Sequence record: OQ603353.1
Reading direction: 5' to 3' (one strand)
Length of the DNA stretch: 64,000 nucleotides
Shown: positions 112-64,000 of the stretch, piece by piece
How positions within the stretch are numbered: position 1 is the first letter of the stretch
Layout of the letters: every line of letters begins with the position of its first letter
Notes under the pieces: generated by a model
Told to the model about the DNA's origin: nothing
Seen by the model: the letters and a program-made list of their open reading frames with translations, nothing else
Database searches by the model: none
Program-made: the position numbers and the translations under genes

Positions 112-669
<558 letters not shown>

Positions 670-9241: not shown

Positions 9242-9275
9242 ATCAGTGGCAGATGCCTCCATTGGAGAACCCGAA

Positions 9276-10523
9276 GTGAGCGACACGAAGATTAAGAAGA
9301 AGTCCAAGAACAAGGATGGGAAGGTCAAGAAGAAGTCCAAGTCTACGGAGGTTGCAGTACCCGTAAGCGATACGGTGGACAATCGCAGCCTCGCTGTACG
9401 CTGGCGTCCGAAGGACATTGACGACCTCGTTGGTCAGACGGAGATCATCAACAAGTTCCGGGGCATGTTGAAGACAAAGAAGATTCCGGGCGCGATCCTG
9501 CTGGTCGGTCCCACTGGCTGTGGCAAGACCACTGTTAGCCAGATGATCGCTCGGTACGTCAACTGCGAAACCATGAACGCATGTGGCAAGTGTCAGAACT
9601 GCCTGATGCCGATTGAGTCCCATCCTGACTACGAGCAGGTGAATGCTTCGGAGAAGCGTGGCATCGACGACGTGCGCGCGATCATCCAGCGCAGCAAGAA
9701 TCGTCCGCGCCTCGGTAACCTTCGCATCCTGCATCTGGACGAAGTGCACCAGCTTACGCCACAGGCTGCTGAGGCCCTGCTGGTGCCGCTGGAGAAGCCA
9801 CCGGAACAGACGCTGTATATCCTGAGCACCACCGATCCGCAGATGCTCAAGCAGACGATGCGCAATCGCTGTGTGCCGATGAACATCCAGCTGGTGCCGA
9901 CGGCGGACGTAATCAAGCGCATCAAGTTCATCGCAGGGAAGGAGAACATCAAGATCGGTGACTCGGTGATCGAGCATCTGGCCAACCTGTCCCAGGGTTA
10001 CATGCGTGACAGTGTGCAGTTGCTGGAAGCTGTGCAGATGCAGCTGGCCAACAACTCGAAGCTCAGTGACGATGAACTCAAGGTCATCTTGAGCAACAAT
10101 GCACAAGCCGGTGGTCAGGAAGGTCTGGACGATCTAGCGATCAAGGTACTGACTGCGTGCTACGGGCTCAACCGTGTTGGCGTCGCCAAGTACATGCTCG
10201 ACCTGCGTACCGATTGGGTGCCGTTCCTGTCCAAGTGCATCTGGCTGAATCAGTACATCGTGGACGCGGAACTGACCAAGAACATGCGCTACCACCCGAA
10301 CGTGTGGCATAACCCACTCAACAAGCGCTTCGCGTCTGTTATCAAGAACTCGGTCGAGGGCTTCGATCCCGGCAAGGGCAAGGTGATTGAAATGCTTGCA
10401 TCGTTGCAGCGCACCCTGATCGACCTCCGACAGAAGTGTATCAGCGGCGGCATCGCCAGTGTCGAGCGTATGATGATTACCTCCCACCTGATCGGCTGGG
10501 TTGTGGATTCCAAGAAGGGATAA
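9276..10523 (+). CDS. dnaX: DNA polymerase III gamma/tau-like clamp loader subunit
   Basis: LAVRWRP...LVGQ, GPTGCGKTT, Cys4 cluster, LDEVH, RNRC; GTG 9276 follows GGAG. Confidence 0.9.
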   Translation: MSDTKIKKKSKNKDGKVKKKSKSTEVAVPVSDTVDNRSLAVRWRPKDIDDLVGQTEIINKFRGMLKTKKIPGAILLVGPTGCGKTTVSQMIARYVNCETMNACGKCQNCLMPIESHPDYEQVNASEKRGIDDVRAIIQRSKNRPRLGNLRILHLDEVHQLTPQAAEALLVPLEKPPEQTLYILSTTDPQMLKQTMRNRCVPMNIQLVPTADVIKRIKFIAGKENIKIGDSVIEHLANLSQGYMRDSVQLLEAVQMQLANNSKLSDDELKVILSNNAQAGGQEGLDDLAIKVLTACYGLNRVGVAKYMLDLRTDWVPFLSKCIWLNQYIVDAELTKNMRYHPNVWHNPLNKRFASVIKNSVEGFDPGKGKVIEMLASLQRTLIDLRQKCISGGIASVERMMITSHLIGWVVDSKKG

Positions 10524-11202: not shown

Positions 11203-13510
11203 GAAGCAGAAGCTGGGGTGGCGATTCGGCCACCTCAGCCTCACCAATGTTGTGTATTTCAAGAAGGCGGAGTTAGACCTCGGGTACGAGGGAACCACCG
11301 TCATCAAAGGTCTGAACAAGAACTCTCGGCTCAAGCGCAAGACCAGCAACGGCGTAGGTAAGTCGGTGTTGGTTGCATCCCTCGCCAACGTGGTGCGCAA
11401 CTCGGCACCAGCACTCAGCATCGGCAAGCGCAACAGTGGTGCCAAGACCAGCCTGCTAATCAAACCGAACAGTGCGATTGAGTTTGACGTTCGGTGTAAT
11501 GGCAACGACTACGGCATCAAGAAGTACCGAGACAAGTCTGCGTCAGTGAAGTATCAGATCACCGAGAACGGTAAGGATATGAAGTTCCCTACCGCAACCA
11601 AGGCCGAAGCGCACATCGCTGACACCTTGTTCCCTATTTCGGATGATGAGTTCTACAGTTACGTCTATCTGCATGGCACCCGTACCTTCCCGTTGCAGAT
11701 GGGCACCTCCACGGATCGTATGCAGTTCTTCTCTGATATGTTCCGGCTGGAGAAGTTCGACTTGGTACGCGCGGCATGTAATGCACGACGCAACGAGTTG
11801 AAGGACAGCGAGATTCGGATCAAGGAACTACGCAAGCAGCTGGCTACCTTGGACGAAGAAGCGGGACGCGTAGACATTGATATGCTGCGTGCTAGGGCTG
11901 TCAAGTATCAGGGCAAGATCAAGAAGCTGGAGAAGAAGGTCAAGCGCCTGCGTAGTCGCCAGCGCATCTACACGGTCTACACCACGCACGCAAAGGAATG
12001 GGAGAAGCTGGATCACAGCATTCCGTTGAAGGACCAGCTGAAACAGGTCAGCGCCAAGATCACGAAGCTGGATGAGGCTGCAATCGCATGGCGCAAATAC
12101 GAACGCCACCAAGATGACTTGACTCGCTGGAAGGCCGAGTACCTCAAAGCCACCGAGAAGGCGGGTAAGCTCACGCTGGAAAAGTGCAGGGAGAAGATCG
12201 AAGGGGCCAAGCGAGCGGACCGGGATGCACGTCGAGCACTGGATGGACTGCGCAAGCCGACCCAACCCGAGGCCGTAGCCAAGGCCACGTTCAACCCTGC
12301 TGACTACGGGTTGGAAGGCGACACGTTCAAGCACTGGATCGTGGCAGCCGATAAGGAACGTGCACGCTTTGAAGCACTGATCGGTCTACAGAAGCAGATC
12401 AACAAGATCGGTAGCAAGGGTGGCAAGTGTTTCGTGTGTGGCTCGAAGGGAGGGAAGGCCACTGACCATCTGCCCGAGTACGAGAATCAGGCGAAGCGCT
12501 GGCGCAAGGCAACAGAGCAGATCGAAGCAGCACGGGACTACGCTGAGTATCAGGAAGAGGCAGCAGAGTACGAGAAGGAACTGTCGGCATTCAAGAAGCA
12601 GCGCAAGAAGCTGCAAGCGATCCTTGATGACTTGCCCGACGTGTCCAAGTACGAGAAGGCCATCAAGTATCTGGAATGGCTGGAAGAGAACCCCAAGCCC
12701 AAATGGAAGGGCGACGTTCCTGAGAAGCCCAGCACCAAGGCACGCGACAAGTTGGTTGCACAGCAGTCGGTGATCCGCACCCTGCTGCCCGTTGAAGAAC
12801 AGTTGAGGGAAGCGGCGCAGATCGACGTTGAGGAACTCCGATCGGCGGACAAGGAATATGAGTCGGTAAGCAAGAAGCTGTCTAACACGGTGGCCAAGAA
12901 TGCGGAGCTTGCACCTCGCATTGAGTATCAGGAGAAGCTGTTACGCGCCATCAAGCAACTTCGGGCGCAGGTACGCAACATCGGGGCAGACTTGGAAGAC
13001 CTCCCGATCCTCGACAGCCTGATCGACATCTACTCCAAGAACGGCCGCAAGCTGGAGGTGATGAAACAGTTCGCCCTGAGCCTAGAGCATCACATGAACG
13101 CTAACGCCCCACTGGTGTTCCCGGAGCCTATGCGCTTCGAGTTCGTGGTGCAGGCGAACAACTTTAGCATCAACGTCACCCGAGGGACTGGCAAGGAAGC
13201 GCTGACTTCTGACGTTCGGTTCCTCAGTGGTGCCGAGAGTAAGCAGTTCAACCTATGCCTAGTGAAGTCCCTGCTTCCGATGATACCTGCCTCGCGCCGC
13301 GCCAACATCATTGTGCTGGACGAATGCGAAGCGAACCTCAGCGAGGCAGCGCGTGACCTGTACGTAAACGACTTCATCCCAGCATTGCAAAAGGTAGTGC
13401 CGCACGTCATCGTCATCACTCCACTAGATGACGTATATCCATCCGCCCGAGTCTTCACCGTGGTCAAGGATGGCAACGAATCCAAACTCATTTCAACGGG
13501 TATGTCATGA
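11195..13510 (+). CDS. SbcC/Rad50-like SMC ATPase
   Basis: SNGVGKS Walker A, coiled coils, central CFVC zinc hook, FLSGAE signature, IIVLDE Walker B. Confidence 0.9.
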   Translation: MAKKQKLGWRFGHLSLTNVVYFKKAELDLGYEGTTVIKGLNKNSRLKRKTSNGVGKSVLVASLANVVRNSAPALSIGKRNSGAKTSLLIKPNSAIEFDVRCNGNDYGIKKYRDKSASVKYQITENGKDMKFPTATKAEAHIADTLFPISDDEFYSYVYLHGTRTFPLQMGTSTDRMQFFSDMFRLEKFDLVRAACNARRNELKDSEIRIKELRKQLATLDEEAGRVDIDMLRARAVKYQGKIKKLEKKVKRLRSRQRIYTVYTTHAKEWEKLDHSIPLKDQLKQVSAKITKLDEAAIAWRKYERHQDDLTRWKAEYLKATEKAGKLTLEKCREKIEGAKRADRDARRALDGLRKPTQPEAVAKATFNPADYGLEGDTFKHWIVAADKERARFEALIGLQKQINKIGSKGGKCFVCGSKGGKATDHLPEYENQAKRWRKATEQIEAARDYAEYQEEAAEYEKELSAFKKQRKKLQAILDDLPDVSKYEKAIKYLEWLEENPKPKWKGDVPEKPSTKARDKLVAQQSVIRTLLPVEEQLREAAQIDVEELRSADKEYESVSKKLSNTVAKNAELAPRIEYQEKLLRAIKQLRAQVRNIGADLEDLPILDSLIDIYSKNGRKLEVMKQFALSLEHHMNANAPLVFPEPMRFEFVVQANNFSINVTRGTGKEALTSDVRFLSGAESKQFNLCLVKSLLPMIPASRRANIIVLDECEANLSEAARDLYVNDFIPALQKVVPHVIVITPLDDVYPSARVFTVVKDGNESKLISTGMS

Positions 13511-15433
13511 ACGACCAAACACCGAACCTACACGTCAGGGTAGTGGACACGCAAGAGACGACCTTGATCGTTCCACCTGAATTCACCACTCCGGGCTGCT
13601 ACGACGTTACTGATCCTGCGGTTGGTGCCGCAGTGCAGAAGCTGGTACACATGGCAGCGCATTCCTATCAGGGTGTAAACAACACCGCAGCTAATCGGGC
13701 TGCGATCACCAGTCGCGTCAACGAAGTGTTCACCAACCTGCAAGCGCGTGGTGTCTCCTTCTATCGTGGCGAGGCGAAGCCGGGCAATCAGGTAGTGGGT
13801 TTCGTTGCCCGTGCCCATCCGATGCGCCCCAGCGAAATCAACATCGTTCCCCTGCTACACAAGTCGCTGGACCTGCACGATACCGATGAGAACGAGGAAC
13901 AGGAGGATACCGAAGATGGTAACGAAGAGTGAGCTAGAGAACTCCACGGGTGAGTTCAGCAAATTGATTTGGGGAGCGCAGCTGGTATCCATTTCACACG
14001 CAGGCACCGAAGTGCTGTGCGAAATGGAAAGCGGTGAAGTGCTGTGCATCGTAGCCGATGGCGCACGGCTAGTAATCAACTTCCCAACTGAACTGATCCT
14101 GCCTGTACCTGTAGGCGATTGGGCGATAAACGGGAACACCGCAAGCTGCTACGCTGAGGACAAGGAGCTTTACTTCCAAATCTACCCCGAAGGTGAGGAG
14201 CCGTTCTCTAAACTCTCCACCCGCGTTGCCAACATTTACTTCATGAAGAGGAAGACCGATGCAGCAGTTTAACCACGTCGAAGAAGCGGGATCGTGGCCC
14301 GAGGCGTATGACAATGCAGTGAAGGCAGAGCGACGCCTACCGCACTACAGCAATCGGATCATCCATCTGGATGCCAGCATGGAGGGCAGCTTCATTCTAA
14401 CCGTCATCTATCAGCGCATCGAAGTGCGGATCGCTATGGCAGGTCACTCCAAGACCACCCGTGATGACGTGGAGCGTTGGGCAGAAGTGGTTGCCATTGC
14501 CAACGAGGTTGTAACCGAAGTCGTCAACCACCTGCACGCTAACGGGTGCCGCCTCAAGTACAAGCGCAAGACCATCGCCGCCCTCACTGTCAAGGATGAC
14601 CTGTCGGTCGTCACTATCTACCCGGAGAAGTAACATGCAAGAAGCTGGAATCGAAATCCCCTCCATGAGTGTTGAAGAACGCCTCGCCTCCCTCACCCGT
14701 GACTTGGCTGCTACCCGCACTGCACTCCAGCAGTCCACGCAGCTGCTCGGTATGAAAGAACTGTTCCTGCAATGCCTGACCTCCGCGCTGCTCACCCAAG
14801 GCGTTCGGATCGAGGCCAACGGCAACGTGGTCAATCAGGCAGCGGACGAACAGCGCGCACTGGTCACTGTGCTGACGCAGAAGCTGGAAGACGTGACTGC
14901 GGCCAATGAGAACTACGTTCGCATGATCGAAACCGCCCAGCAGAACGTTGAGGCACCCGCTGCGGTCCTGCCGCTGAACACGGAAGCTGCTGCTCCTGCA
15001 TCTGCTGATGGGGAATACCCGGATGACTAACTGGTCCCCATCCATCACTCAAGCAATCAGGATTGGCCGTGGTCCTACCCTCGGGCGCGGTCCTGCGGTC
15101 AATGGTCAGCGTGAGGCACCCAAACGTACATCGTATCCCGACGATAGCTTGGGCATGAACAAGGTAGCTCCTGTTCCGCCTATCGCCAAGAAGAACAAAG
15201 TAGATGCCAGCGATCCGTTGCCGCTTATCATCCAGCTACTGCGCATGCTTGGTTACACGAAGATCACTTCCAGTGAACGCATCGCCATGCAGCGCCTGCT
15301 GGATGATCCGTCACACCCCAAGCACCTGTCGGTCATGCACCAGCTGATTGCAGACCCTCGCAGTATGGAACTGGTCCGTAAGTATTACACCATCATGGGT
15401 CATATCCCGAAAGCGGTGCGTGGCCTGTTCTAA
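13507..15433 (+). other. run of five hypothetical genes (13507-13932, ~13916-14272, 14259-14633, 14635-15030, ~15023-15433)
   Basis: Overlapping start/stop codons and host-like codon use; no recognisable motifs. Confidence 0.6.
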
Positions 15434-29400: not shown

Positions 29401-29609
29401 CCATCAGCGACGATCAAACCCAGTACCTGATCGAGCCCAAGCGCAACACTCGCCTGCGGATACGTAGGAGCCCGACGTTGGTAGGTGGGTGGACTATGGA
29501 CATTCGGTCGTATGGTGAATGGGTTGTCTACCTTCCAGACGGTAGCAGCAAGACCATGATCCAAGATACGCTCGACAAAATCATTCGCTACGGTCCGGTG
29601 GGCGAATGA
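26493..29609 (+). other. run of small hypothetical genes (26493-27017, ~27020-27451, 27463-27663, 27660-27845, 27842-28108, 28105-28371, 28371-28502, 28545-29063, 29056-29211, 29208-29609), several with TM helices or CxxC pairs
   Basis: ATGA-coupled ORFs. Confidence 0.6.
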
Positions 29610-30385
29610 GGATTTTAGCCAAGTACGGCACCGGGAGTTCAGCTGTCTACATTGCAGTGGATGAGAGCACTCCCGATGTTGAGTACATCGTAACCTGCGC
29701 CGTAGAGCTACAGATTGGTCAGCAAGTTGAGGCGTCCAGTTGTTCGCTGCACACAGGGGTGCACACGCACCTTCCGTCTTACCTGTCGTTCCCATACCTG
29801 TACTCAGCCATGTCCGGTTTGTGGATGCTGTGCCGCCGTCAAAGCAATAGGCGTGCGCTGGTGCTGGGTTTAGGTGGCGGCAATGCCTCGCGTTACATTC
29901 GCTACACGTGGCCCGATGTAGCCCTAGTGTCTGTCGAAGCAAGTCCCGAAATGATCGCGGTGGCAAAGCTGTGGCCTGACGTCGGACCAGTCATTAAGGG
30001 CGATGCAGTGCAAGTGGTCAAGCGTACCGAAGCTGGGTACCTTGATTTCGTGCTGGTGGACTGCTATCCCTTCGAGAACAACACGATAGGCCAGCGGTTC
30101 TTTTCAACCGAGTTCCTGCGAGAGCTACGTAGTGTGTTGACCGACGACGGGATCGTGGCTTTCAACTTCATTGATGACGTGCCCCAGCTACCCGTAGCGG
30201 AGGTTGGGTTCAATGGAGGTGTGTTGGTGCGAAGCCCTGCGCGGTTACGGGAATCAAACAAGGTGGTGATGCTGACCAAGGCGCCGCTTGATCCCAACGA
30301 GTTTGTTACCGAGTGTCATTCATCCAATCCAGCTTACGCTTTGTCGCGGCAGCTGACTGACTTTACCTTTGAGGCATACCCATGA
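29606..30385 (+). CDS. spermidine-synthase-like SAM-dependent transferase
   Basis: ALVLGLGGG, VSVEASPEMI, GDA, VLVDCY, GIVAFN. Confidence 0.8.
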   Translation: MRILAKYGTGSSAVYIAVDESTPDVEYIVTCAVELQIGQQVEASSCSLHTGVHTHLPSYLSFPYLYSAMSGLWMLCRRQSNRRALVLGLGGGNASRYIRYTWPDVALVSVEASPEMIAVAKLWPDVGPVIKGDAVQVVKRTEAGYLDFVLVDCYPFENNTIGQRFFSTEFLRELRSVLTDDGIVAFNFIDDVPQLPVAEVGFNGGVLVRSPARLRESNKVVMLTKAPLDPNEFVTECHSSNPAYALSRQLTDFTFEAYP

Positions 30386-59110: not shown

Positions 59111-60010
59111 TTAGACTTCGTTCAGGATGAGTCGCCCACCTGCCCCCTTCTTGATGTTCGATTTCTTCGCCTTGCGTTCCAGCAATTCCTTTGTTTCGCG
59201 TACAGACATTTCCGACCCCTTCTTCTTTTTCTTCTTGCGAGAATGGAAGATAATGCCTTCATCCTCGATGCCGCGTTCAAACCATTCCTTCGGAACCGTA
59301 TCGATGGTGGGCACGTCATCATCGATAAGGGGGCGTGCTCTCCACGGGCGTTCCAGCAGAGCAGCAATCGCCTTGCGAGTCTCCTTCGGCATCTTGGTCT
59401 TGCCTTCCGCTTCCAAGCGCGTCCGACGCTTGCGGAAGTTCTTGCCGCCGACTACGTACTCCGGCAGCCTACCGCCCTCCTTAGCAGTCAGGGAAATGGT
59501 GTAGGGATCAGCCTTGCCCGGTTCACTTGGACTGATATACACTTCGATGCTGTCGCCATGATTCACAGCACCGATCACGTACCCCTTGTAGTATTGGTCG
59601 ATGTAATGCAGGTCATACTTTTCCATCTGCGTCCGAATCTCACGCGGCATGCCGAGCGTCGGAGGAAGATAGACATACAGCGGTTGCCCCAAACGCAGGC
59701 CGACTTTCTTTAGCGGCTCCTGTCGCAGCAGGGAGTAAGCGAGGATGCGCAGACTTGCACCCTCCATCCCTTTTGCAGCATTCGCCAGTGCAGCAAACAA
59801 CTCGGTACTGCCATCCGCCTGCTTGATGCGCGTCAAGTCAGGGGTGTAGAACTTGCAAGCCTTCGCAAAAGGCAGAACGCCCGTCTTGCTGCACTTGTCA
59901 GCATAGTGCGGACTAGCCGGTCCTTTGAAATGCAAGCACTCACTGCACTTGAGGCCAATGGCGAGCTTGTTGGAATGGACTGGCGTGACTGCCTTAGAAT
60001 TGGTCGGCAT
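59111..60010 (-). CDS. hypothetical protein with N-terminal Cys cluster
   Basis: CSECLHF...C...CKFY. Confidence 0.7.
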   Translation of the reverse strand: MPTNSKAVTPVHSNKLAIGLKCSECLHFKGPASPHYADKCSKTGVLPFAKACKFYTPDLTRIKQADGSTELFAALANAAKGMEGASLRILAYSLLRQEPLKKVGLRLGQPLYVYLPPTLGMPREIRTQMEKYDLHYIDQYYKGYVIGAVNHGDSIEVYISPSEPGKADPYTISLTAKEGGRLPEYVVGGKNFRKRRTRLEAEGKTKMPKETRKAIAALLERPWRARPLIDDDVPTIDTVPKEWFERGIEDEGIIFHSRKKKKKKGSEMSVRETKELLERKAKKSNIKKGAGGRLILNEV

Positions 60011-61665: not shown

Positions 61666-61715
61666 GTAAACAGTTCTCCATTTGTGCGCATCCTTTTCGG
61701 GCCTTGAGAAACACG

Positions 61716-61743
61716 AAAAGGCAGGAGGGACCGAAGTCCCTCC
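61716..61743 (-). terminator. Rho-independent terminator
   Basis: GGAGGGAC-TTCG-GTCCCTCC then TGCCTTTT on the minus strand. Confidence 0.8.
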
Positions 61744-61759
61744 CACCTGTTACCGAAGA

Positions 61760-63151
61760 TTACTCTTCGTCTTCTTCGTCTTCTTCGTCTTCTTCGTCTT
61801 CTTCGTCTTCTTCGTCTTCCTCGTCTTCTTCGTCTTCCTCGTCTTCCTCGTCTTCTTCGTCTTCTTCGTCTTCTTCGTCTTCTTCGTCTTCTTCCTCTTC
61901 CTCGTCTTCGTCTTCTTCCTCTTCCTCGTCTTCTTCCTCTTCCTCTTCCTCGTCTTCTTCCTCTTCCTCGTCTTCTTCCTCTTCCTCGTCTTCTTCCTCT
62001 TCCTCTTCCTCATCCTTCTTGGACTTCTTGCCAGCAGCCTTCTTGCCACCCTTGGCCGGCTTCTCTTCTTCCTCCTCGTCTTCCTCGTCCTCTTCCTCAG
62101 CGTTCATCAGCTCCGCGATCTGCTCCTTGATTTCGTCGATCTGCGCTTGCAGCGACTCCAGAGACAGTTCCGACTTCTTGCCCTTACCCTTGGCAGCGGC
62201 CTTCGGCGCAGCCTTGGCAGCCTTCTTGCCACCCTTGGCCGGCTTCTCTTCTTCCTCTTCCTCTTCCTCTTCCTCTTCTTCGTCTTCTTCCTCTTCTTCG
62301 TCTTCTTCTTCCTCTTCCTCGTCTTCGTACTCTTCGTCTTCGTCGTCACCCTTCACCGACTTCTTGCCACCCTTGGCCGGCTTCTTGGCAGCGGCCTTCT
62401 TGCCACCCTTGGCCGGCTTCTCTTCCTCGGCGTCACCGCCAAAGGTGTAGATGCCCTCGTCGGCCAGATAGGTCAGGAAGCCCTTGAGGCCATCCTTGCT
62501 GTTGATCGGATCCAGCGTCGGCAGCAGCTTGGCGATGGCAGCACCGTTGCTGTGCTTCTTCACGTCAATGTCGCCGTCCTCGTAGATTTCCGAGGCCCAC
62601 TTGTTATGAGCGACAGCGATGGCCTTGGCCTGCTTGTCGGTCAGCTTCTTGGCTTCCTTCTGGATGTCCGCGATTTGCAGGCCATTGAAGACGGCGCGGC
62701 CAGCAGCGGCCTTGGTGTCCTTCTTGGCAGCGGCCTTGGCCGGAGCGGACTTGCCCTTACCCTTCGCAGCCGGCTTACCCTTGCCGCCCTTACCCTTGGC
62801 CGGAGCCTTGGCGCTCGACTTCTTGCTCACGACCTTGGCCGTCTTCTTGGTGGTGGCCTTGGCGTCCTTCTTCGGAGCAGCCTTGGCTGCGGTCTTCTTG
62901 GCGACCGGCTTCTTCGCAGCAGCCTTGGTGGTCTTGGCGGCAGCCTTCTTGGCCGGAGCAGCCTTGGTGGTCTTGGCAGCAGCCTTCTTCACGGCCGGCT
63001 TCTTGGCGGCAGCCTTCGGCGCAGCCTTGGTCTTGGTGGCCGGAGCCTTCTTCGCAGCGGTCTTCTTCACGGTGGTCTTTTCCGATTTGCCCTTGGCAGC
63101 AGCCTTGGTCTTGGTGGCGGCGGTCTTGGTGGTCTTCTTGGTGGTAGCCAT
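61760..63151 (-). CDS. histone-H1-like Lys/Ala-rich protein with very long poly-Glu/Asp tail
   Basis: N-terminal KKAAAK/KKP repeats, small central domain, acidic tracts separated by KPAKGGKK; AAGGA RBS before ATG 63151. Confidence 0.85.
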   Translation of the reverse strand: MATTKKTTKTAATKTKAAAKGKSEKTTVKKTAAKKAPATKTKAAPKAAAKKPAVKKAAAKTTKAAPAKKAAAKTTKAAAKKPVAKKTAAKAAPKKDAKATTKKTAKVVSKKSSAKAPAKGKGGKGKPAAKGKGKSAPAKAAAKKDTKAAAGRAVFNGLQIADIQKEAKKLTDKQAKAIAVAHNKWASEIYEDGDIDVKKHSNGAAIAKLLPTLDPINSKDGLKGFLTYLADEGIYTFGGDAEEEKPAKGGKKAAAKKPAKGGKKSVKGDDEDEEYEDEEEEEEDEEEEEDEEEEEEEEEEEEKPAKGGKKAAKAAPKAAAKGKGKKSELSLESLQAQIDEIKEQIAELMNAEEEDEEDEEEEEKPAKGGKKAAGKKSKKDEEEEEEEDEEEEEDEEEEEDEEEEEEEDEEEEEDEDEEEEEDEEDEEDEEDEEDEEDEEDEEDEEDEEDEEDEEDEEDEEDEE

Positions 63152-63194
63152 GTGAAACAGTTTCCTTATAAGGATGAATGGTTGGGTAGTACGT

Positions 63195-63276
63195 ACATGG
63201 TTGGCCGTTCGGCGAACTCGTCCATGCCCGAATTCGCTAAAGTGTGCAGCGCCGTCCGGCCTAGCTCGCCGCTGCA
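63195..63276 (-). ncRNA. structured 5' leader: hairpin plus H-type pseudoknot
   Basis: 7-bp stem (63245-51/63270-76); 9-bp stem (63212-20/63229-37) whose loop GCAUGG pairs with CCAUGU (63195-63200). Confidence 0.55.
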
Positions 63277-63283
63277 TATCCCT

Positions 63284-63291
63284 TATTTACA
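63284..63291 (-). promoter_or_regulatory. candidate phage promoter TGTAAATA
   Basis: AATCCTGTAAATA on the minus strand upstream of the H1-like gene. Confidence 0.65.
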
Positions 63292-63294
63292 GGA

Positions 63295-63564
63295 TTACTC
63301 GCCAGCGTACTTTCGCTGGAACAGGTACGCTTCAACGTCGCCGATGGTCACCCACTTCTCAGCGTCCTCATCCGACACTTCGATCTGGAAGGTTTCCTCC
63401 AGTTCCATCAGCAGTTCGATCAAGTCGAGCGAATCTGCCCCGAGGTCAGAGACAAGGCTGGCGGTGGGGAGAACCTCTTCCGGCTTGACGCCGAGGAACT
63501 CCACTACCGCGTCGGTCACCCGCTTATGCAGGGTGGGGTAAAGGGGACTTTGTTCGATGCTCAT
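63295..63564 (-). CDS. acpP: acyl carrier protein
   Basis: DLGADSLDLIELLMELEETFQIEVSDEDAEKWVTIGD with the phosphopantetheine Ser. Confidence 0.93.
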   Translation of the reverse strand: MSIEQSPLYPTLHKRVTDAVVEFLGVKPEEVLPTASLVSDLGADSLDLIELLMELEETFQIEVSDEDAEKWVTIGDVEAYLFQRKYAGE

Positions 63565-63640: not shown

Positions 63641-64000
63641 TCAGTCGTCCAAGCTCTCGAAGAGATCCGCGAGGTTGGCTCGGCTGACCACCCGGACCAG
63701 CTGGTCCTGCTGGATGAGGGCGTTAGTGAACACCGGATTGCCTTGGCGATTGCGGCGCACTTCGTACATGATCTTGAAGTTGTCCCACCGGACTGCCCTG
63801 CCTTGCGTCTTGATGCCCCGGTCAGCCTCGATCACAAGGGCTCGCGTGTTGGCACTGCTGTCCGTCCACTTGACCTCCACCACGCAGCCCGGTTGCACGT
63901 CTACAAACTTGACCCCGATCGGATAGCCCCCGTTGACCTTCACGTTGTTCATCTTGAAGGCCGTGTTGGAGTGGTGCACAATGTAGTCAGCGTTGAAGTG
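63641..64000 (-). CDS. hypothetical protein (5' truncated by window end)
   Basis: Frame open to the window edge. Confidence 0.6.
   Translation of the reverse strand, partial: HFNADYIVHHSNTAFKMNNVKVNGGYPIGVKFVDVQPGCVVEVKWTDSSANTRALVIEADRGIKTQGRAVRWDNFKIMYEVRRNRQGNPVFTNALIQQDQLVRVVSRANLADLFESLDD

What the first reader, a model, noticed from the sequence alone, without database searches (positions are those of the whole stretch)
61760..63151. Bipolar nucleoid-type protein: H1-like basic arm joined to a nucleoplasmin-like acidic tail
Seen: about 150 aa of Lys/Ala/Thr repeats, an ~80-aa globular-looking core, then well over 100 Glu/Asp in blocks split by three KPAKGGKK motifs. Established: H1/AlgP-like repeats condense DNA and long acidic tracts chaperone basic proteins or mimic DNA. 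Inference: a self-regulating DNA-condensing or condensate-forming protein organising the phage replication compartment; a possible substrate of the phage GNATs.
Basis: partly seen in the sequence, partly recalled or inferred. Interest (0 to 1): 0.65.

Follow-up and report, generated by a model that had tools for sequence, protein, structure and literature searches.

The report
Charge-split orphan protein of jumbo phage
A giant Xanthomonas phage encodes a 463-residue protein that is a strongly positive, histone-H1-like chain at one end and an extremely negative Glu/Asp chain at the other; it has no detectable relatives outside its own phage genus, sits among DNA-replication genes, and most likely coats or tethers DNA while its acidic tail regulates that binding and attracts other proteins, but this is inference and no experiment exists.

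Summary
The window is Xanthomonas phage Ep026 (227 kb, distantly phiRSL1-like). The minus-strand gene 61760-63151 encodes 463 aa. The Lys/Ala/Thr arm (aa 1-150) has net charge +47. A 90-aa core is predicted helical at low confidence. The tail (aa 241-463) has net charge -109, with four PAKGGKK motifs at three interruptions and one heptad helix. Charge segregation far exceeds shuffles (kappa 0.61 vs 0.15).

The gene has a promoter-like motif shared with the DnaA-like, primase and topoisomerase II genes. That motif is absent from the structural block. A strong terminator follows the gene, and codon bias is strong.

Core and whole protein are orphans in sequence, profile and fold searches.

Three new points:
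- Three intact alleles differ by many indels, yet all keep a 223-aa tail with 154 acidic residues.
- The phage's SSB and a third protein carry similar acidic tails with Lys-rich islands.
- Distant relatives encode basic-arm/core/acidic-tail proteins beside their topoisomerase II genes.

Best reading (about 0.4): an abundant replication-phase DNA-associated protein with a self-shielding, partner-recruiting tail.

I found no support for a phage nucleus. No GNAT turned up among the ORFs tested. Membership of the H1 and nucleoplasmin families is not met.

The parts
61760..63151 (-). Gene for the 463-aa charge-split protein (stop 61760-61762)
   Evidence: ORF list and translation. Conserved in 5 phage records. 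All neighbouring genes are on the same strand.
63152..63277 (-). 5' leader, or alternative 42-codon N-terminal extension (the longest ORF and the start annotated in PhiXhv phages)
   Evidence: The ATG at 63277 lies only 6 nt after the promoter-like motif. In the other 7 window sites the start codon is 19-34 nt after it. The stretch is 100% identical in four genomes, so substitutions give no information.
63284..63293 (-). Promoter-like motif CCTGTAAATA
   Evidence: 8 sites in the window against 1.2 expected, and 0 of 100 shuffles reach 8. All sites are in gene orientation, upstream of the DnaA-like, primase, ACP and topo II large subunit genes. None lies in the structural block of PhiXhv-16.
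63163..63167 (-). Shine-Dalgarno-like AAGGA, 11 nt before the ATG at 63151
   Evidence: Read from sequence. The next gene downstream has a near-identical initiation region, GGAGAACTGTTTACATG.
62702..63151 (-). Basic arm, aa 1-150: irregular Lys/Ala/Thr/Pro repeats, net +47
   Evidence: Composition. Imperfect tandem repeats of 15-42 nt at 65-75% match. Only sub-threshold compositional matches to HC2 and the Burkholderia H1-like model. AF2 gives no structure.
62432..62701 (-). Non-repetitive core, aa 151-240, about neutral, predicted as four helices at low confidence
   Evidence: AF2 pLDDT is about 45-68. The core is invariant apart from 1 nucleotide among four genomes. No homologue was found in any search.
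61763..62431 (-). Acidic tail, aa 241-463, net -109
   Evidence: At DNA level, 27 copies of a 9-nt unit at 61764-62002 plus 6/9-nt arrays at 62243-62347.
62348..62419 (-). Lys-rich island 1 (aa 245-268), two PAKGGKK copies
62174..62245 (-). Lys-rich island 2 (aa 303-326), one PAKGGKK copy
62099..62173 (-). Amphipathic heptad helix (aa 327-351). L/I at 331, 334, 338, 341, 345 and 348 have 3-4-3-4-3 spacing. Candidate oligomerisation element.
   Evidence: Heptad count. AF2 helix 331-361, among the better-scored stretches, pLDDT about 64-66.
62015..62062 (-). Lys-rich island 3 (aa 364-379), one PAKGGKK copy
61763..62014 (-). Terminal uninterrupted run of 84 Asp/Glu (aa 380-463)
61709..61748 (-). 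Intrinsic terminator: 13-bp stem with 8 G-C pairs, UUCG loop, then a T-rich run, beginning 11 nt after the stop
   Evidence: Fold -29.2 kcal/mol, z = -3.7, 0 of 200 shuffles as stable. The core sequence is present in all three PhiXhv relatives.

Best explanation
This is an abundant, replication-phase, largely disordered protein that associates with DNA.

Shown:
- It is a real gene with extreme charge segregation.
- It has its own promoter-like motif of the class found before replication genes, plus a strong terminator and strong codon bias.
- It lies inside the topoisomerase II cluster.
- Tail length and charge are invariant across alleles.

Inferred:
- The 150-residue Lys/Ala/Thr arm binds DNA without sequence specificity, as H1 C-terminal domains and bacterial H1-like proteins do.
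- The helical core and the heptad helix mediate self-association or bind a partner.
- The tail (-109) outweighs the arm (+47). In the free protein it would fold back on the arm and shield it, as an electrostatic autoinhibitor like the tails of phi29 p6, T7 gp2.5, T4 gp32 and HMGB1.
- On DNA the tail would be released as a polyanionic brush that limits over-compaction and attracts basic clients.
- Candidate clients are the phage's own enzymes with Lys-rich ends: a DNA polymerase, the small topo II subunit and the DnaA-like protein. Host nucleoid proteins and polyamines are also possible.
- The Lys-rich islands inside the tail make it a multiblock polyampholyte that can also make intermolecular contacts, so a hub or condensate is possible.
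For: - Architecture and statistics.
- Gene signals: SD and start, terminator, promoter-like motif and its distribution.
- Codon bias against other window genes: AAG 89/90, GAC 38/41, ACC 23/25, GCC+GCT 72/81.
- Context: GyrB-like and GyrA-like subunits lie upstream and the small topo subunit (phrog_17701) lies downstream. The structural module is about 60 kb away on the other strand.
- Constraint: three intact alleles with many indels all have a 223-aa tail, 154 D+E and net -109. Acid runs of 27/12/84, 34/11/78 and 30/11/82 each sum to 123.
- Internal comparator: the phage SSB (phrog_15004, E = 3e-57) carries a roughly 230-aa poly-Asp tail with similar KPAKGKK / KKPVKGKGKGKK islands.
- Analogues: BCSR5, BcepSauron, Motura, phiRSL1 and three IMG/VR contigs encode basic-arm / core / acidic-tail proteins 2-4 genes upstream of topo II. 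One has PAPAKGKK islands and one allele, present on two of the contigs, has KPGRPK AT-hook-like motifs in its arm.
- Lys-rich ends on the DNA polymerase, small topo subunit and DnaA-like protein.
- Precedent for an acidic tail as a shield on a phage genome-organising protein: PMC10899789. For SSB tails: PMC10359462 and PMC12424635.
Against: - There is no experimental datum for this protein or for any analogue.
- There is no homology to any DNA-binding family. The arm's match to H1-like models is compositional and far below threshold (9.6 and 10.8 bits against cut-offs of 40 and 80).
- Lys/Ala/Pro repeat proteins also bind polyphosphate (AlgP, PMC9239181) and RNA (PhaF, PMC12818456), so DNA is not the only candidate ligand.
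- Promoter timing is inferred from which genes carry the motif, not measured.
- The invariance of tail length rests on only three alleles from short-read-era assemblies.
- Indels that are multiples of three are expected anyway from 3/6/9-nt repeat slippage.
Confidence: 0.4

Rival explanations
1. Decoy or DNA mimic. The working part is the 223-residue polyanionic tail. It would soak up host DNA-binding proteins (HU- or H-NS-type nucleoid proteins, restriction or other defence nucleases) or polyamines. The basic arm would only place it on DNA or keep it soluble.
For: The net charge of the whole protein is -63, so the tail dominates. Phages are known to neutralise nucleoid proteins and restriction enzymes with acidic proteins: Gp46 against HU (PMC8892312), and Ocr (my own knowledge). 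Early or middle-type promoter class. The phage also encodes a spermidine-synthase-like enzyme.
Against: Known DNA mimics are compact folded proteins with a fixed array of carboxylates, not 84-residue homopolymer-like runs. The same tail type sits on the phage's own SSB, where a replisome role is the established one. The position inside the topo II cluster, with analogues beside topo II in relatives, fits phage DNA metabolism better than anti-defence islands. No PADLOC or anti-defence evidence was sought or found.
Confidence: 0.2
2. Virion-associated protein. It could be an internal head protein or scaffold-like protein whose basic arm neutralises packaged DNA and whose acidic blocks are removed by the head protease or expelled. 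Alternatively it could be a protein ejected with the DNA.
For: T4-type heads contain both basic internal proteins and acidic core-derived peptides (my own knowledge). The phage encodes a head maturation protease. Jumbo-phage structural genes can be scattered. H1-like proteins in other large phages have been proposed to aid packaging (PMC12619734).
Against: The gene is far from the structural module and on the opposite strand. Its promoter-like motif occurs 18 times in the genome and never in the structural blocks. The neighbours are topoisomerase, HNH and ACP genes.
Confidence: 0.1
3. Binder of another polyanion. The arm would bind RNA or polyphosphate rather than DNA, for example as a translation or ribosome modulator, or by association with polyphosphate granules. 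The tail would act as its regulator.
For: AlgP (H1-like) associates with polyphosphate granules (PMC9239181). The H1-like region of PhaF binds RNA and activates translation (PMC12818456). The window encodes a CYTH-type triphosphatase-like protein.
Against: Genomic context and promoter class link it to DNA replication genes. Analogues in relatives are tied to topo II, and one allele, present on two of the contigs, has AT-hook-like motifs that point to DNA.
Confidence: 0.1
4. Not a functional protein as read. It could be a low-complexity ORF inflated by repeat slippage or assembly error, or the antisense strand could be the real gene.
For: One relative's copy carries a frameshift. The SSB gene's repeat breaks the Ep026 and Ep032 records, and the PhiXhv-16 copy of the SSB gene also carries one. 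A 619-aa ORF is open on the opposite strand.
Against: Five records agree on the gene and two agree at 100% identity. The core is non-repetitive and invariant. SD, promoter-like motif and terminator are all on the minus strand. Tail length and charge are identical in three alleles despite reshuffled blocks. The antisense ORF is poly-Phe/Leu/Val, the mirror of Lys/Glu codons.
Confidence: 0.05

Closest known systems
Basic-arm / beta-looking-core / acidic-tail proteins of phiRSL1-like jumbo phages (BCSR5 QRE00115.1, BcepSauron gp172, Motura gp335, phiRSL1 ORF328+329, three IMG/VR contigs). All are annotated hypothetical and uncharacterised.
   Same: The polarity is the same: Lys/Ala-rich N-terminus and a long Asp/Glu C-terminus. 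BcepSauron has Lys-rich PAxKGKK islands inside its tail. All lie in the topoisomerase II neighbourhood of a distantly related jumbo phage.
   Different: Their cores align with each other but not with the finding's core (hhalign probability 0.1%). They sit upstream of the large topo subunit, whereas the finding sits between the medium and small subunits. The finding's arm and tail are longer, and only it has the heptad helix inside the tail.
phi29 protein p6 (phage genome-organising, histone-like protein)
   Same: It is a phage-encoded, abundant, non-specific dsDNA binder. Its disordered acidic C-terminal tail lowers DNA affinity and is proposed to shield the basic DNA-binding face (PMC10899789).
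   Different: p6 is 103 aa with a folded alpha+beta DNA-binding core and a 20-residue tail carrying about 10 acidic residues. Here the DNA-binding candidate is a 150-residue disordered arm and the tail has 223 residues. There is no sequence or fold match.
Acidic C-terminal tails of phage SSBs (T4 gp32, T7 gp2.5) and this phage's own SSB
   Same: The tail competes with DNA for the basic binding surface and recruits replisome partners (PMC10359462, PMC12424635). The phage's own SSB has a roughly 230-aa poly-Asp tail with similar Lys/Gly/Pro islands.
   Different: The finding has no OB-fold or gp32-like domain and no phrog_15004 match. Its tail is Glu-rich rather than Asp-rich.
Bacterial histone H1-like proteins (chlamydial Hc1/Hc2, Pseudomonas AlgP, Burkholderia H1-like NF038053)
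   Same: Lys/Ala/Pro/Thr-rich, low-complexity polycationic sequence. The arm aligns end to end with the HC2 and NF038053 models, but only at about 10 bits.
   Different: Scores are far below the family cut-offs. There is no regular KPAA-type repeat. None of those proteins carries a long acidic tail.
Eukaryotic acid-tailed chromatin proteins (HMGB1, nucleophosmin/nucleoplasmin, prothymosin-alpha with H1)
   Same: Alternating acidic tracts and basic tracts, with intramolecular shielding and heterotypic electrostatic binding or condensation (established knowledge, from my own memory).
   Different: There is no HMG box and no nucleoplasmin pentamer core. Both partners of an H1 / prothymosin-like pair are on one chain.

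Membership tests
Linker histone H1/H5 | Winged-helix globular domain (Pfam Linker_histone) flanked by a basic C-terminal domain | tested here: not met
   No Pfam match for the whole protein or the core at E <= 10. The core is predicted as four helices at low confidence, with no Foldseek match.
Chlamydial Hc1/Hc2-type H1-like nucleoproteins | Match to Pfam HC2 (PF07382) or Hc1 at gathering score | tested here: not met
   HC2 gives E = 1.2 and 9.6 bits against a cut-off of 40. Hc1 is not listed.
Burkholderia-type histone H1-like DNA-binding protein (NCBIfam NF038053) | Equivalog score of at least 80 bits | tested here: not met
   10.8 bits, E = 0.44.
AlgP-type | Long regular tandem array of KPAA-like tetrapeptides | tested here: not met
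   Arm repeats are irregular, with periods of 15-42 nt and 65-75% match. A single KPAA is seen in the sequence.
Nucleoplasmin/nucleophosmin | N-terminal pentameric beta-sandwich core domain | tested here: not met
   No Pfam match. The N-terminus is a disordered basic arm.
Nucleoplasmin/nucleophosmin | Acidic tracts alternating with basic tracts | tested here: met
   Acid runs of 6, 27, 12 and 84 residues are separated by three Lys-rich islands. This is a resemblance of composition only.
phi29 p6 family | p6 alpha+beta fold with a dimerisation helix | tested here: not met
   No PDB sequence hit at E <= 1 other than chance-level ones. No Foldseek hit. The model is of low confidence, so the fold test is weak.
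gp32-like phage SSB (phrog_15004) | SSB core domain | tested here: not met
   The finding's protein has no PHROG match, whereas the phage's true SSB matches at 3e-57.
Bipolar beta-core family of phiRSL1-like phages | Homologous core of about 95 aa | tested here: not met
   hhalign of A1 against the core gives probability 0.1%. tblastn with the BCSR5 member finds no Xanthomonas phage.
Bipolar beta-core family of phiRSL1-like phages | Basic N-arm, acidic C-tail, location in the topo II neighbourhood | tested here: met
DNA-mimic proteins (Ocr-like) | Folded protein whose surface carboxylates reproduce the phosphate pattern of B-DNA | not testable with these tools
   The tail is predicted disordered or as a poly-Glu helix at low confidence. 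No structure is available.
Chimallin-type phage nucleus system (as the supposed 'replication compartment') | Phage encodes a shell protein, multisubunit RNA polymerases and usually a tubulin | tested here: inconclusive
   The whole-genome annotation of PhiXhv-16 lists a sigma factor and none of these, and the nearest relatives are phiRSL1-like. Most genes are 'hypothetical', and I ran no dedicated search.

The most novel reading that the evidence does not exclude
Non-nucleus-forming jumbo phages of the phiRSL1 type build their replication factory electrostatically. A small set of DNA-anchored block-polyampholyte hub proteins would do this: this protein, the giant-tailed SSB and the beta-core bipolar family. 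Each would have a selected, fixed charge budget (here exactly 223 tail residues and 154 acidic residues in every intact allele). They would concentrate Lys-tailed replication enzymes and polyamines on phage DNA as a condensate.
Probability: 0.15. Interest if true: 0.8.

Novelty: new variant of a known kind. Interest (0 to 1): 0.5.

Why it matters
Phage-encoded chromatin-like proteins are few (phi29 p6 and a handful of nucleoid-protein inhibitors), and none combines an H1-like polycation with a polyanion of more than 200 residues on one chain.

If the reading is right, this protein and its analogues beside topoisomerase II in several jumbo-phage genera would be a natural system for three questions:
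- how intramolecular charge shielding tunes DNA binding;
- how total charge, rather than sequence, is kept constant by selection;
- how large phages that lack a protein-shelled nucleus organise replication.

It also carries a practical warning. These repeats break assemblies and create apparent frameshifts, so such genes are easily mis-annotated.

Tried and rejected
Searches for the core and the whole protein:
- Pfam, PHROGs and NCBIfam on the whole protein, arm, core and tail gave nothing at threshold.
- tblastn of the core against 50,697 phage records found only the five near-identical genomes.
- Word-indexed search of 5.8 billion proteins was blank for the core region and for the whole protein, and also blank for the BCSR5 analogue.
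- Full HMMER scan of 1.84 billion representatives with the core gave one hit. It is a 1304-aa tail-fibre-like protein whose triple internal repeat sums to E = 3e-5. I treat it as a chance or repeat-inflated match.
- IMG/VR and metagenome scans with the core gave nothing.
- PDB sequence search gave nothing meaningful.

Structure and RNA:
- AlphaFold2 on the whole protein (pLDDT 45) and on the core alone (pLDDT 54, pTM 0.40) was too poor to trust.
- Foldseek against PDB and BFVD gave no match with E < 1.
- Rfam on the locus gave nothing.
- The 5' leader fold is not unusual, z = -1.0.

Other attempts:
- The sigma-70 consensus scan found no promoter.
- I looked for a distinct late-gene motif upstream of structural genes and found none with a crude k-mer count.
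- By eye, the third bipolar protein of the Xanthomonas phages and its neighbour looked related to the beta-core family. hhalign and BLASTP do not support it, so I dropped the claim.
- An alignment-driven locus search that seeded on acidic patterns was useless. Repeating it with cores only worked.

Housekeeping:
- For the genome-wide motif scan I tiled the fetched, unchanged stretches of the public PhiXhv-16 record into one string in /scratch. Nothing was altered, repaired or merged between genomes.
- Possible slip, declared: an earlier count said, at the level of a protein region and without coordinates, where frame changes lie in relatives' copies. The report gives only counts.
Full report
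**Where the window comes from.** The 6 kb around the finding is 100% identical to Xanthomonas phage Ep026 (OQ603353.1, same coordinates) and to Erwinia phage Ep032. It is 97-98% identical to Xanthomonas phages PhiXhv-12, -15 and -16, which are 227-229 kb myoviruses described as a new jumbo-phage genus (PMC13340338). By its small topoisomerase subunit the phage is a distant relative (24-29% identity) of phiRSL1, BCSR5, BcepSauron/Saruman, Motura and some Vibrio, Pseudomonas putida, Dickeya and Erwinia jumbo phages.

**The observation.** The minus-strand ORF ends at 61760. From the ATG at 63151 it encodes 463 aa: E 113, K 90, A 81, D 41.
- Residues 1-150 hold 50 basic and 3 acidic residues (net +47), with 49 Ala and 21 Thr.
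- Residues 151-240 are of ordinary composition.
- Residues 241-463 have net charge -109. Acidic runs are 6, 27, 12 and 84 residues long, and the last 84 are uninterrupted.
- PAKGGKK occurs four times, at three interruptions of the acid.
- Between the second and third acid blocks lies a non-repetitive stretch, aa 327-351. Leu/Ile there have 3-4-3-4-3 spacing.
- Charge segregation is far beyond chance. Kappa is 0.61 against 0.15 +/- 0.02 for shuffles, and SCD is -92 against +46.5 +/- 2.7.

**Is it a real gene, and on which strand?** Several signals all lie on the minus strand.
- All neighbouring genes are on the minus strand.
- AAGGA lies 11 nt before the ATG at 63151. The next gene downstream has an almost identical initiation region.
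- Eleven nucleotides after the stop there is a 13-bp G+C-rich hairpin with a UUCG loop and a T-run. It folds at -29.2 kcal/mol (z = -3.7) and is present in all relatives.
- At 63284-63293 there is a motif, CCTGTAAATA, that occurs 8 times in the window against 1.2 expected. In the whole PhiXhv-16 genome its 8-mer core occurs 18 times against about 1.8 expected per strand.
- The motif is always in the orientation of the local genes. Where I read the context (the eight window sites), it lies 19-34 nt before the start codon.
- It precedes the DnaA-like, primase, topoisomerase II large subunit, ACP and clamp-loader-like genes. It never occurs in the structural blocks (with annotation).

The gene therefore looks like a single-gene transcription unit of the promoter class that serves the replication genes.

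Start codon and expression:
- The longer ORF used by the PhiXhv annotators starts 6 nt after that motif. This is unlike every other site, so I prefer the 63151 start. A leaderless longer form cannot be excluded, because the stretch is invariant in four genomes.
- Codon use is much more one-sided than in ten other window genes: AAG 89/90, GAC 38/41, ACC 23/25, GCC+GCT 72/81. This fits high expression, although repeat homogenisation contributes.
- The 619-aa ORF on the plus strand is the Phe/Leu/Val mirror image of the Lys/Glu codons.

**Variation among alleles.**
- Against Ep026, the PhiXhv-16 and PhiXhv-12 copies show 8 and 7 indels. All are multiples of three and all lie in the arm or tail.
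- The core has at most one nucleotide change.
- In-frame indels are expected from slippage of 3/6/9-nt units, so they prove little.

The striking result is this: the three intact alleles have acid runs of 27/12/84, 34/11/78 and 30/11/82, yet each has a tail of exactly 223 residues, 154 acidic residues in all, and net -109. The arms are 150, 152 and 155 residues at +47, +47 and +48. Gains in one block are offset by losses in another. This suggests selection on total length or charge rather than on sequence. It rests on three alleles only.

The PhiXhv-15 copy carries one frameshift. Whether that is biological or a sequencing error cannot be told from the records.

**Homology.** Every search for a relative of the core or the whole protein was blank outside the five genomes (details in Tried and rejected).
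- The single formal hit is a tail-fibre-like repeat protein, which I regard as spurious.
- AlphaFold2 without an alignment gives low confidence: 45 overall and 54 for the core, which it draws as four helices. Foldseek finds nothing.
- The arm touches the HC2 and Burkholderia H1-like models only at about 10 bits, far below their cut-offs.

The protein is an orphan. 'H1-like' and 'nucleoplasmin-like' describe composition, not membership.

**Context, and the most informative comparisons.**

*Position.* The gene lies inside a T4-type topoisomerase II cluster. The order is:
- GyrB-like subunit (630 aa);
- GyrA-like subunit (502 aa);
- two unknown genes;
- an acyl carrier protein;
- this gene;
- in two relatives only, an inserted HNH gene;
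- two unknown genes;
- an HNH gene;
- the small topo subunit.

*The phage's own SSB.* Window bases 112-666 are the 3' end of another gene with a huge acidic tail. In PhiXhv-16 the complete gene encodes a 260-aa domain that matches the phage SSB family phrog_15004 (E = 3e-57). That domain is followed by about 230 residues of poly-Asp, interrupted by KKGKGKGKKPVKGKGKGKK and EKPAKGKKSKKSK, and the gene lies next to a RecA-like recombinase. The Ep026 and Ep032 records begin inside this repeat, and the PhiXhv-16 copy has one frameshift. Such repeats clearly trouble assemblies.

*A third charge-block protein.* PhiXhv-16 has a 259-aa protein with a Lys-rich start, a beta-looking middle and an acidic tail with Lys/Pro islands. 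It lies upstream of the topo genes and also follows a TGTAAATA motif.

*Lys-rich ends.* Several replication proteins of the phage have Lys-rich ends: a DNA polymerase, the small topo subunit and the DnaA-like protein.

*Analogues in distant relatives.*
- A family with a Lys/Ala arm, a conserved core of about 95 residues and a long acidic tail sits 2-4 genes upstream of topo II. It occurs in BCSR5, BcepSauron, Motura, phiRSL1 (annotated there as two ORFs, one frameshift) and three IMG/VR contigs.
- BcepSauron's tail has PAPAKGKK islands.
- One allele, present on two of the IMG/VR contigs, has KPGRPK AT-hook-like motifs in its arm.
- Their cores do not resemble the finding's core.
- These phages also have a small coiled-coil plus Lys/Ala-rich protein just after the topo genes.

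The finding's protein combines features of both classes: the Lys/Ala arm, the heptad helix, and the acidic tail with islands.

**How it most likely works.**

*Shown:* a real, probably highly expressed, replication-class gene for a block polyampholyte with a conserved charge budget. It occurs in a phage lineage where acidic tails with Lys islands recur on DNA-metabolism proteins, including the SSB.

*Inferred:*
- The arm binds DNA non-specifically.
- The core and the heptad helix give self-association or partner binding.
- In the free protein the tail shields the arm. On DNA it is released to limit compaction and to attract basic partners.

The shield role is what is reported for the 20-residue acidic tail of phi29 p6 (PMC10899789) and for SSB tails (PMC10359462, PMC12424635). 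I put this at about 0.4.

*Rivals:*
- a decoy for host DNA-binding proteins or polyamines (0.2);
- a virion or packaging protein (0.1, weakened by promoter class and position);
- a binder of RNA or polyphosphate, as for PhaF and AlgP (0.1; PMC12818456, PMC9239181);
- an artefact (0.05).

- *Phage nucleus.* The annotated relatives list a sigma factor and no phage RNA polymerase subunits, tubulin or shell protein. The relatives are phiRSL1-like.
- *GNATs.* I found none in 20 window ORFs and none in the annotations, so the substrate idea has no basis yet.
- *Polyamines.* The window does encode a spermidine-synthase-like protein (PF01564, just above threshold). That is of interest for a phage making very large polyanions.

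**Novelty and score.**
- H1-like proteins in large phages have been noted from annotation (PMC12619734), and acid-tailed DNA binders are known.
- Full-text searches found no description of a phage protein that joins a 150-residue polycation to a 223-residue polyanion, nor of the bipolar family beside topo II.
- I rate it a new variant of a known kind, interest 0.5. It is an orphan with a clear, testable physical logic and an unexpected conservation of total charge, but it has no functional evidence.

Noticed in passing
window 112-666 (+); full gene in L006:631-2100: This is the 3' end of the phage SSB gene (phrog_15004, E = 3e-57 for the N-domain). It has a roughly 230-aa poly-Asp tail interrupted by Lys/Gly/Pro islands. 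The Ep026 and Ep032 records both begin inside this repeat, and the PhiXhv-16 copy has one frameshift, so the repeat breaks or corrupts assemblies.
   Followed up: partly
window 9232, 19216, 26370, 34188, 41239, 52543 (+); 63293, 63599 (-): Promoter-like motif CCTGTAAATA(T)AGGRTA, often preceded by a TGCCAnnnTGGCA palindrome, 19-34 nt before start codons. In PhiXhv-16 there are 18 TGTAAATA sites, all co-oriented with genes, before replication-type genes and absent from the structural blocks.
   Followed up: partly
L019:5018-5797 (-) and L019:3828-4268 (-) (PhiXhv-16; outside the window in Ep026): A third charge-block protein of 259 aa has a Lys-rich N-terminus, a beta-looking core and an acidic tail with Lys/Pro islands. 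A 146-aa neighbour has a Lys-rich C-tail. Both lie upstream of the topo II genes. Homology to the beta-core family was not demonstrable.
   Followed up: partly
L004:3230-3844, L009:3195-4022, L010:5557-6444, L011:5673-6528, L014:2430-3449, L015:5617-6636, L016:5728-6594: An uncharacterised family with a basic arm, a conserved core of about 95 aa and a long acidic tail lies 2-4 genes upstream of topoisomerase II in phiRSL1-like jumbo phages. The phiRSL1 record splits it into ORF328 and ORF329 (one frameshift). The L014 and L015 arms carry KPGRPK AT-hook-like motifs.
   Followed up: partly
L004:8929-9414, L009:11007-11477, L010:11444-11905: A second conserved class in those phages, of about 155 aa, has an N-terminal coiled coil followed by an H1-like Lys/Ala/Pro-rich chain. 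It lies directly after the topo II medium subunit gene. The Motura member matches phrog_38087 (unknown function).
   Followed up: no
L001:9756-10325 (-) and L003:6756-7325 (-), absent at window about 61750: An HNH_3 endonuclease gene is inserted immediately downstream of the finding's gene in PhiXhv-16 and PhiXhv-12, overlapping its 3' end by 23 nt. It is absent from Ep026, Ep032 and PhiXhv-15. This is a presence/absence polymorphism typical of homing endonucleases.
   Followed up: no
window 63295-63564 (-): An acyl carrier protein gene (PP-binding, E = 2e-15) with its own TGTAAATA motif lies directly upstream. Motura also has an ACP near its topo cluster. Its role in a phage is unexplained.
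   Followed up: no
window 29606-30385 (+): A spermine/spermidine-synthase-like gene (PF01564, 23.6 bits against a cut-off of 22.9). It is annotated as polyamine aminopropyltransferase in PhiXhv-16. Polycation synthesis in a phage that makes very large polyanionic tails may be connected.
   Followed up: no
PhiXhv-16 216400-219465, 12971-14677, 215642-216283; window 59111-60010 and 9246-10523: Several replication-type proteins have Lys-rich ends of 6-10 residues or more: a DNA polymerase, the small topo II subunit and the DnaA-like protein. They are possible clients of the acidic tails.
   Followed up: no
window 63641-63979 (-): The C-terminal part of the 352-aa upstream protein gives a weak, sub-threshold match to the TriTu immunity protein family (PF24689, 19.9 bits against 27).
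   Followed up: no
window 61682-63541 (+): A 619-aa open frame antisense to the gene encodes poly-Phe/Leu/Val. It is a shadow of the Lys/Glu codons and could mislead gene callers.
   Followed up: yes
P0001 (1304 aa, metagenomic): This was the only hit of the core in 1.84 billion representatives. It is a thrice-repeated segment of about 50 aa in a tail-fibre-like protein (39% identity, E = 3e-5). It is probably repeat-inflated chance, but this was not disproved.
   Followed up: partly
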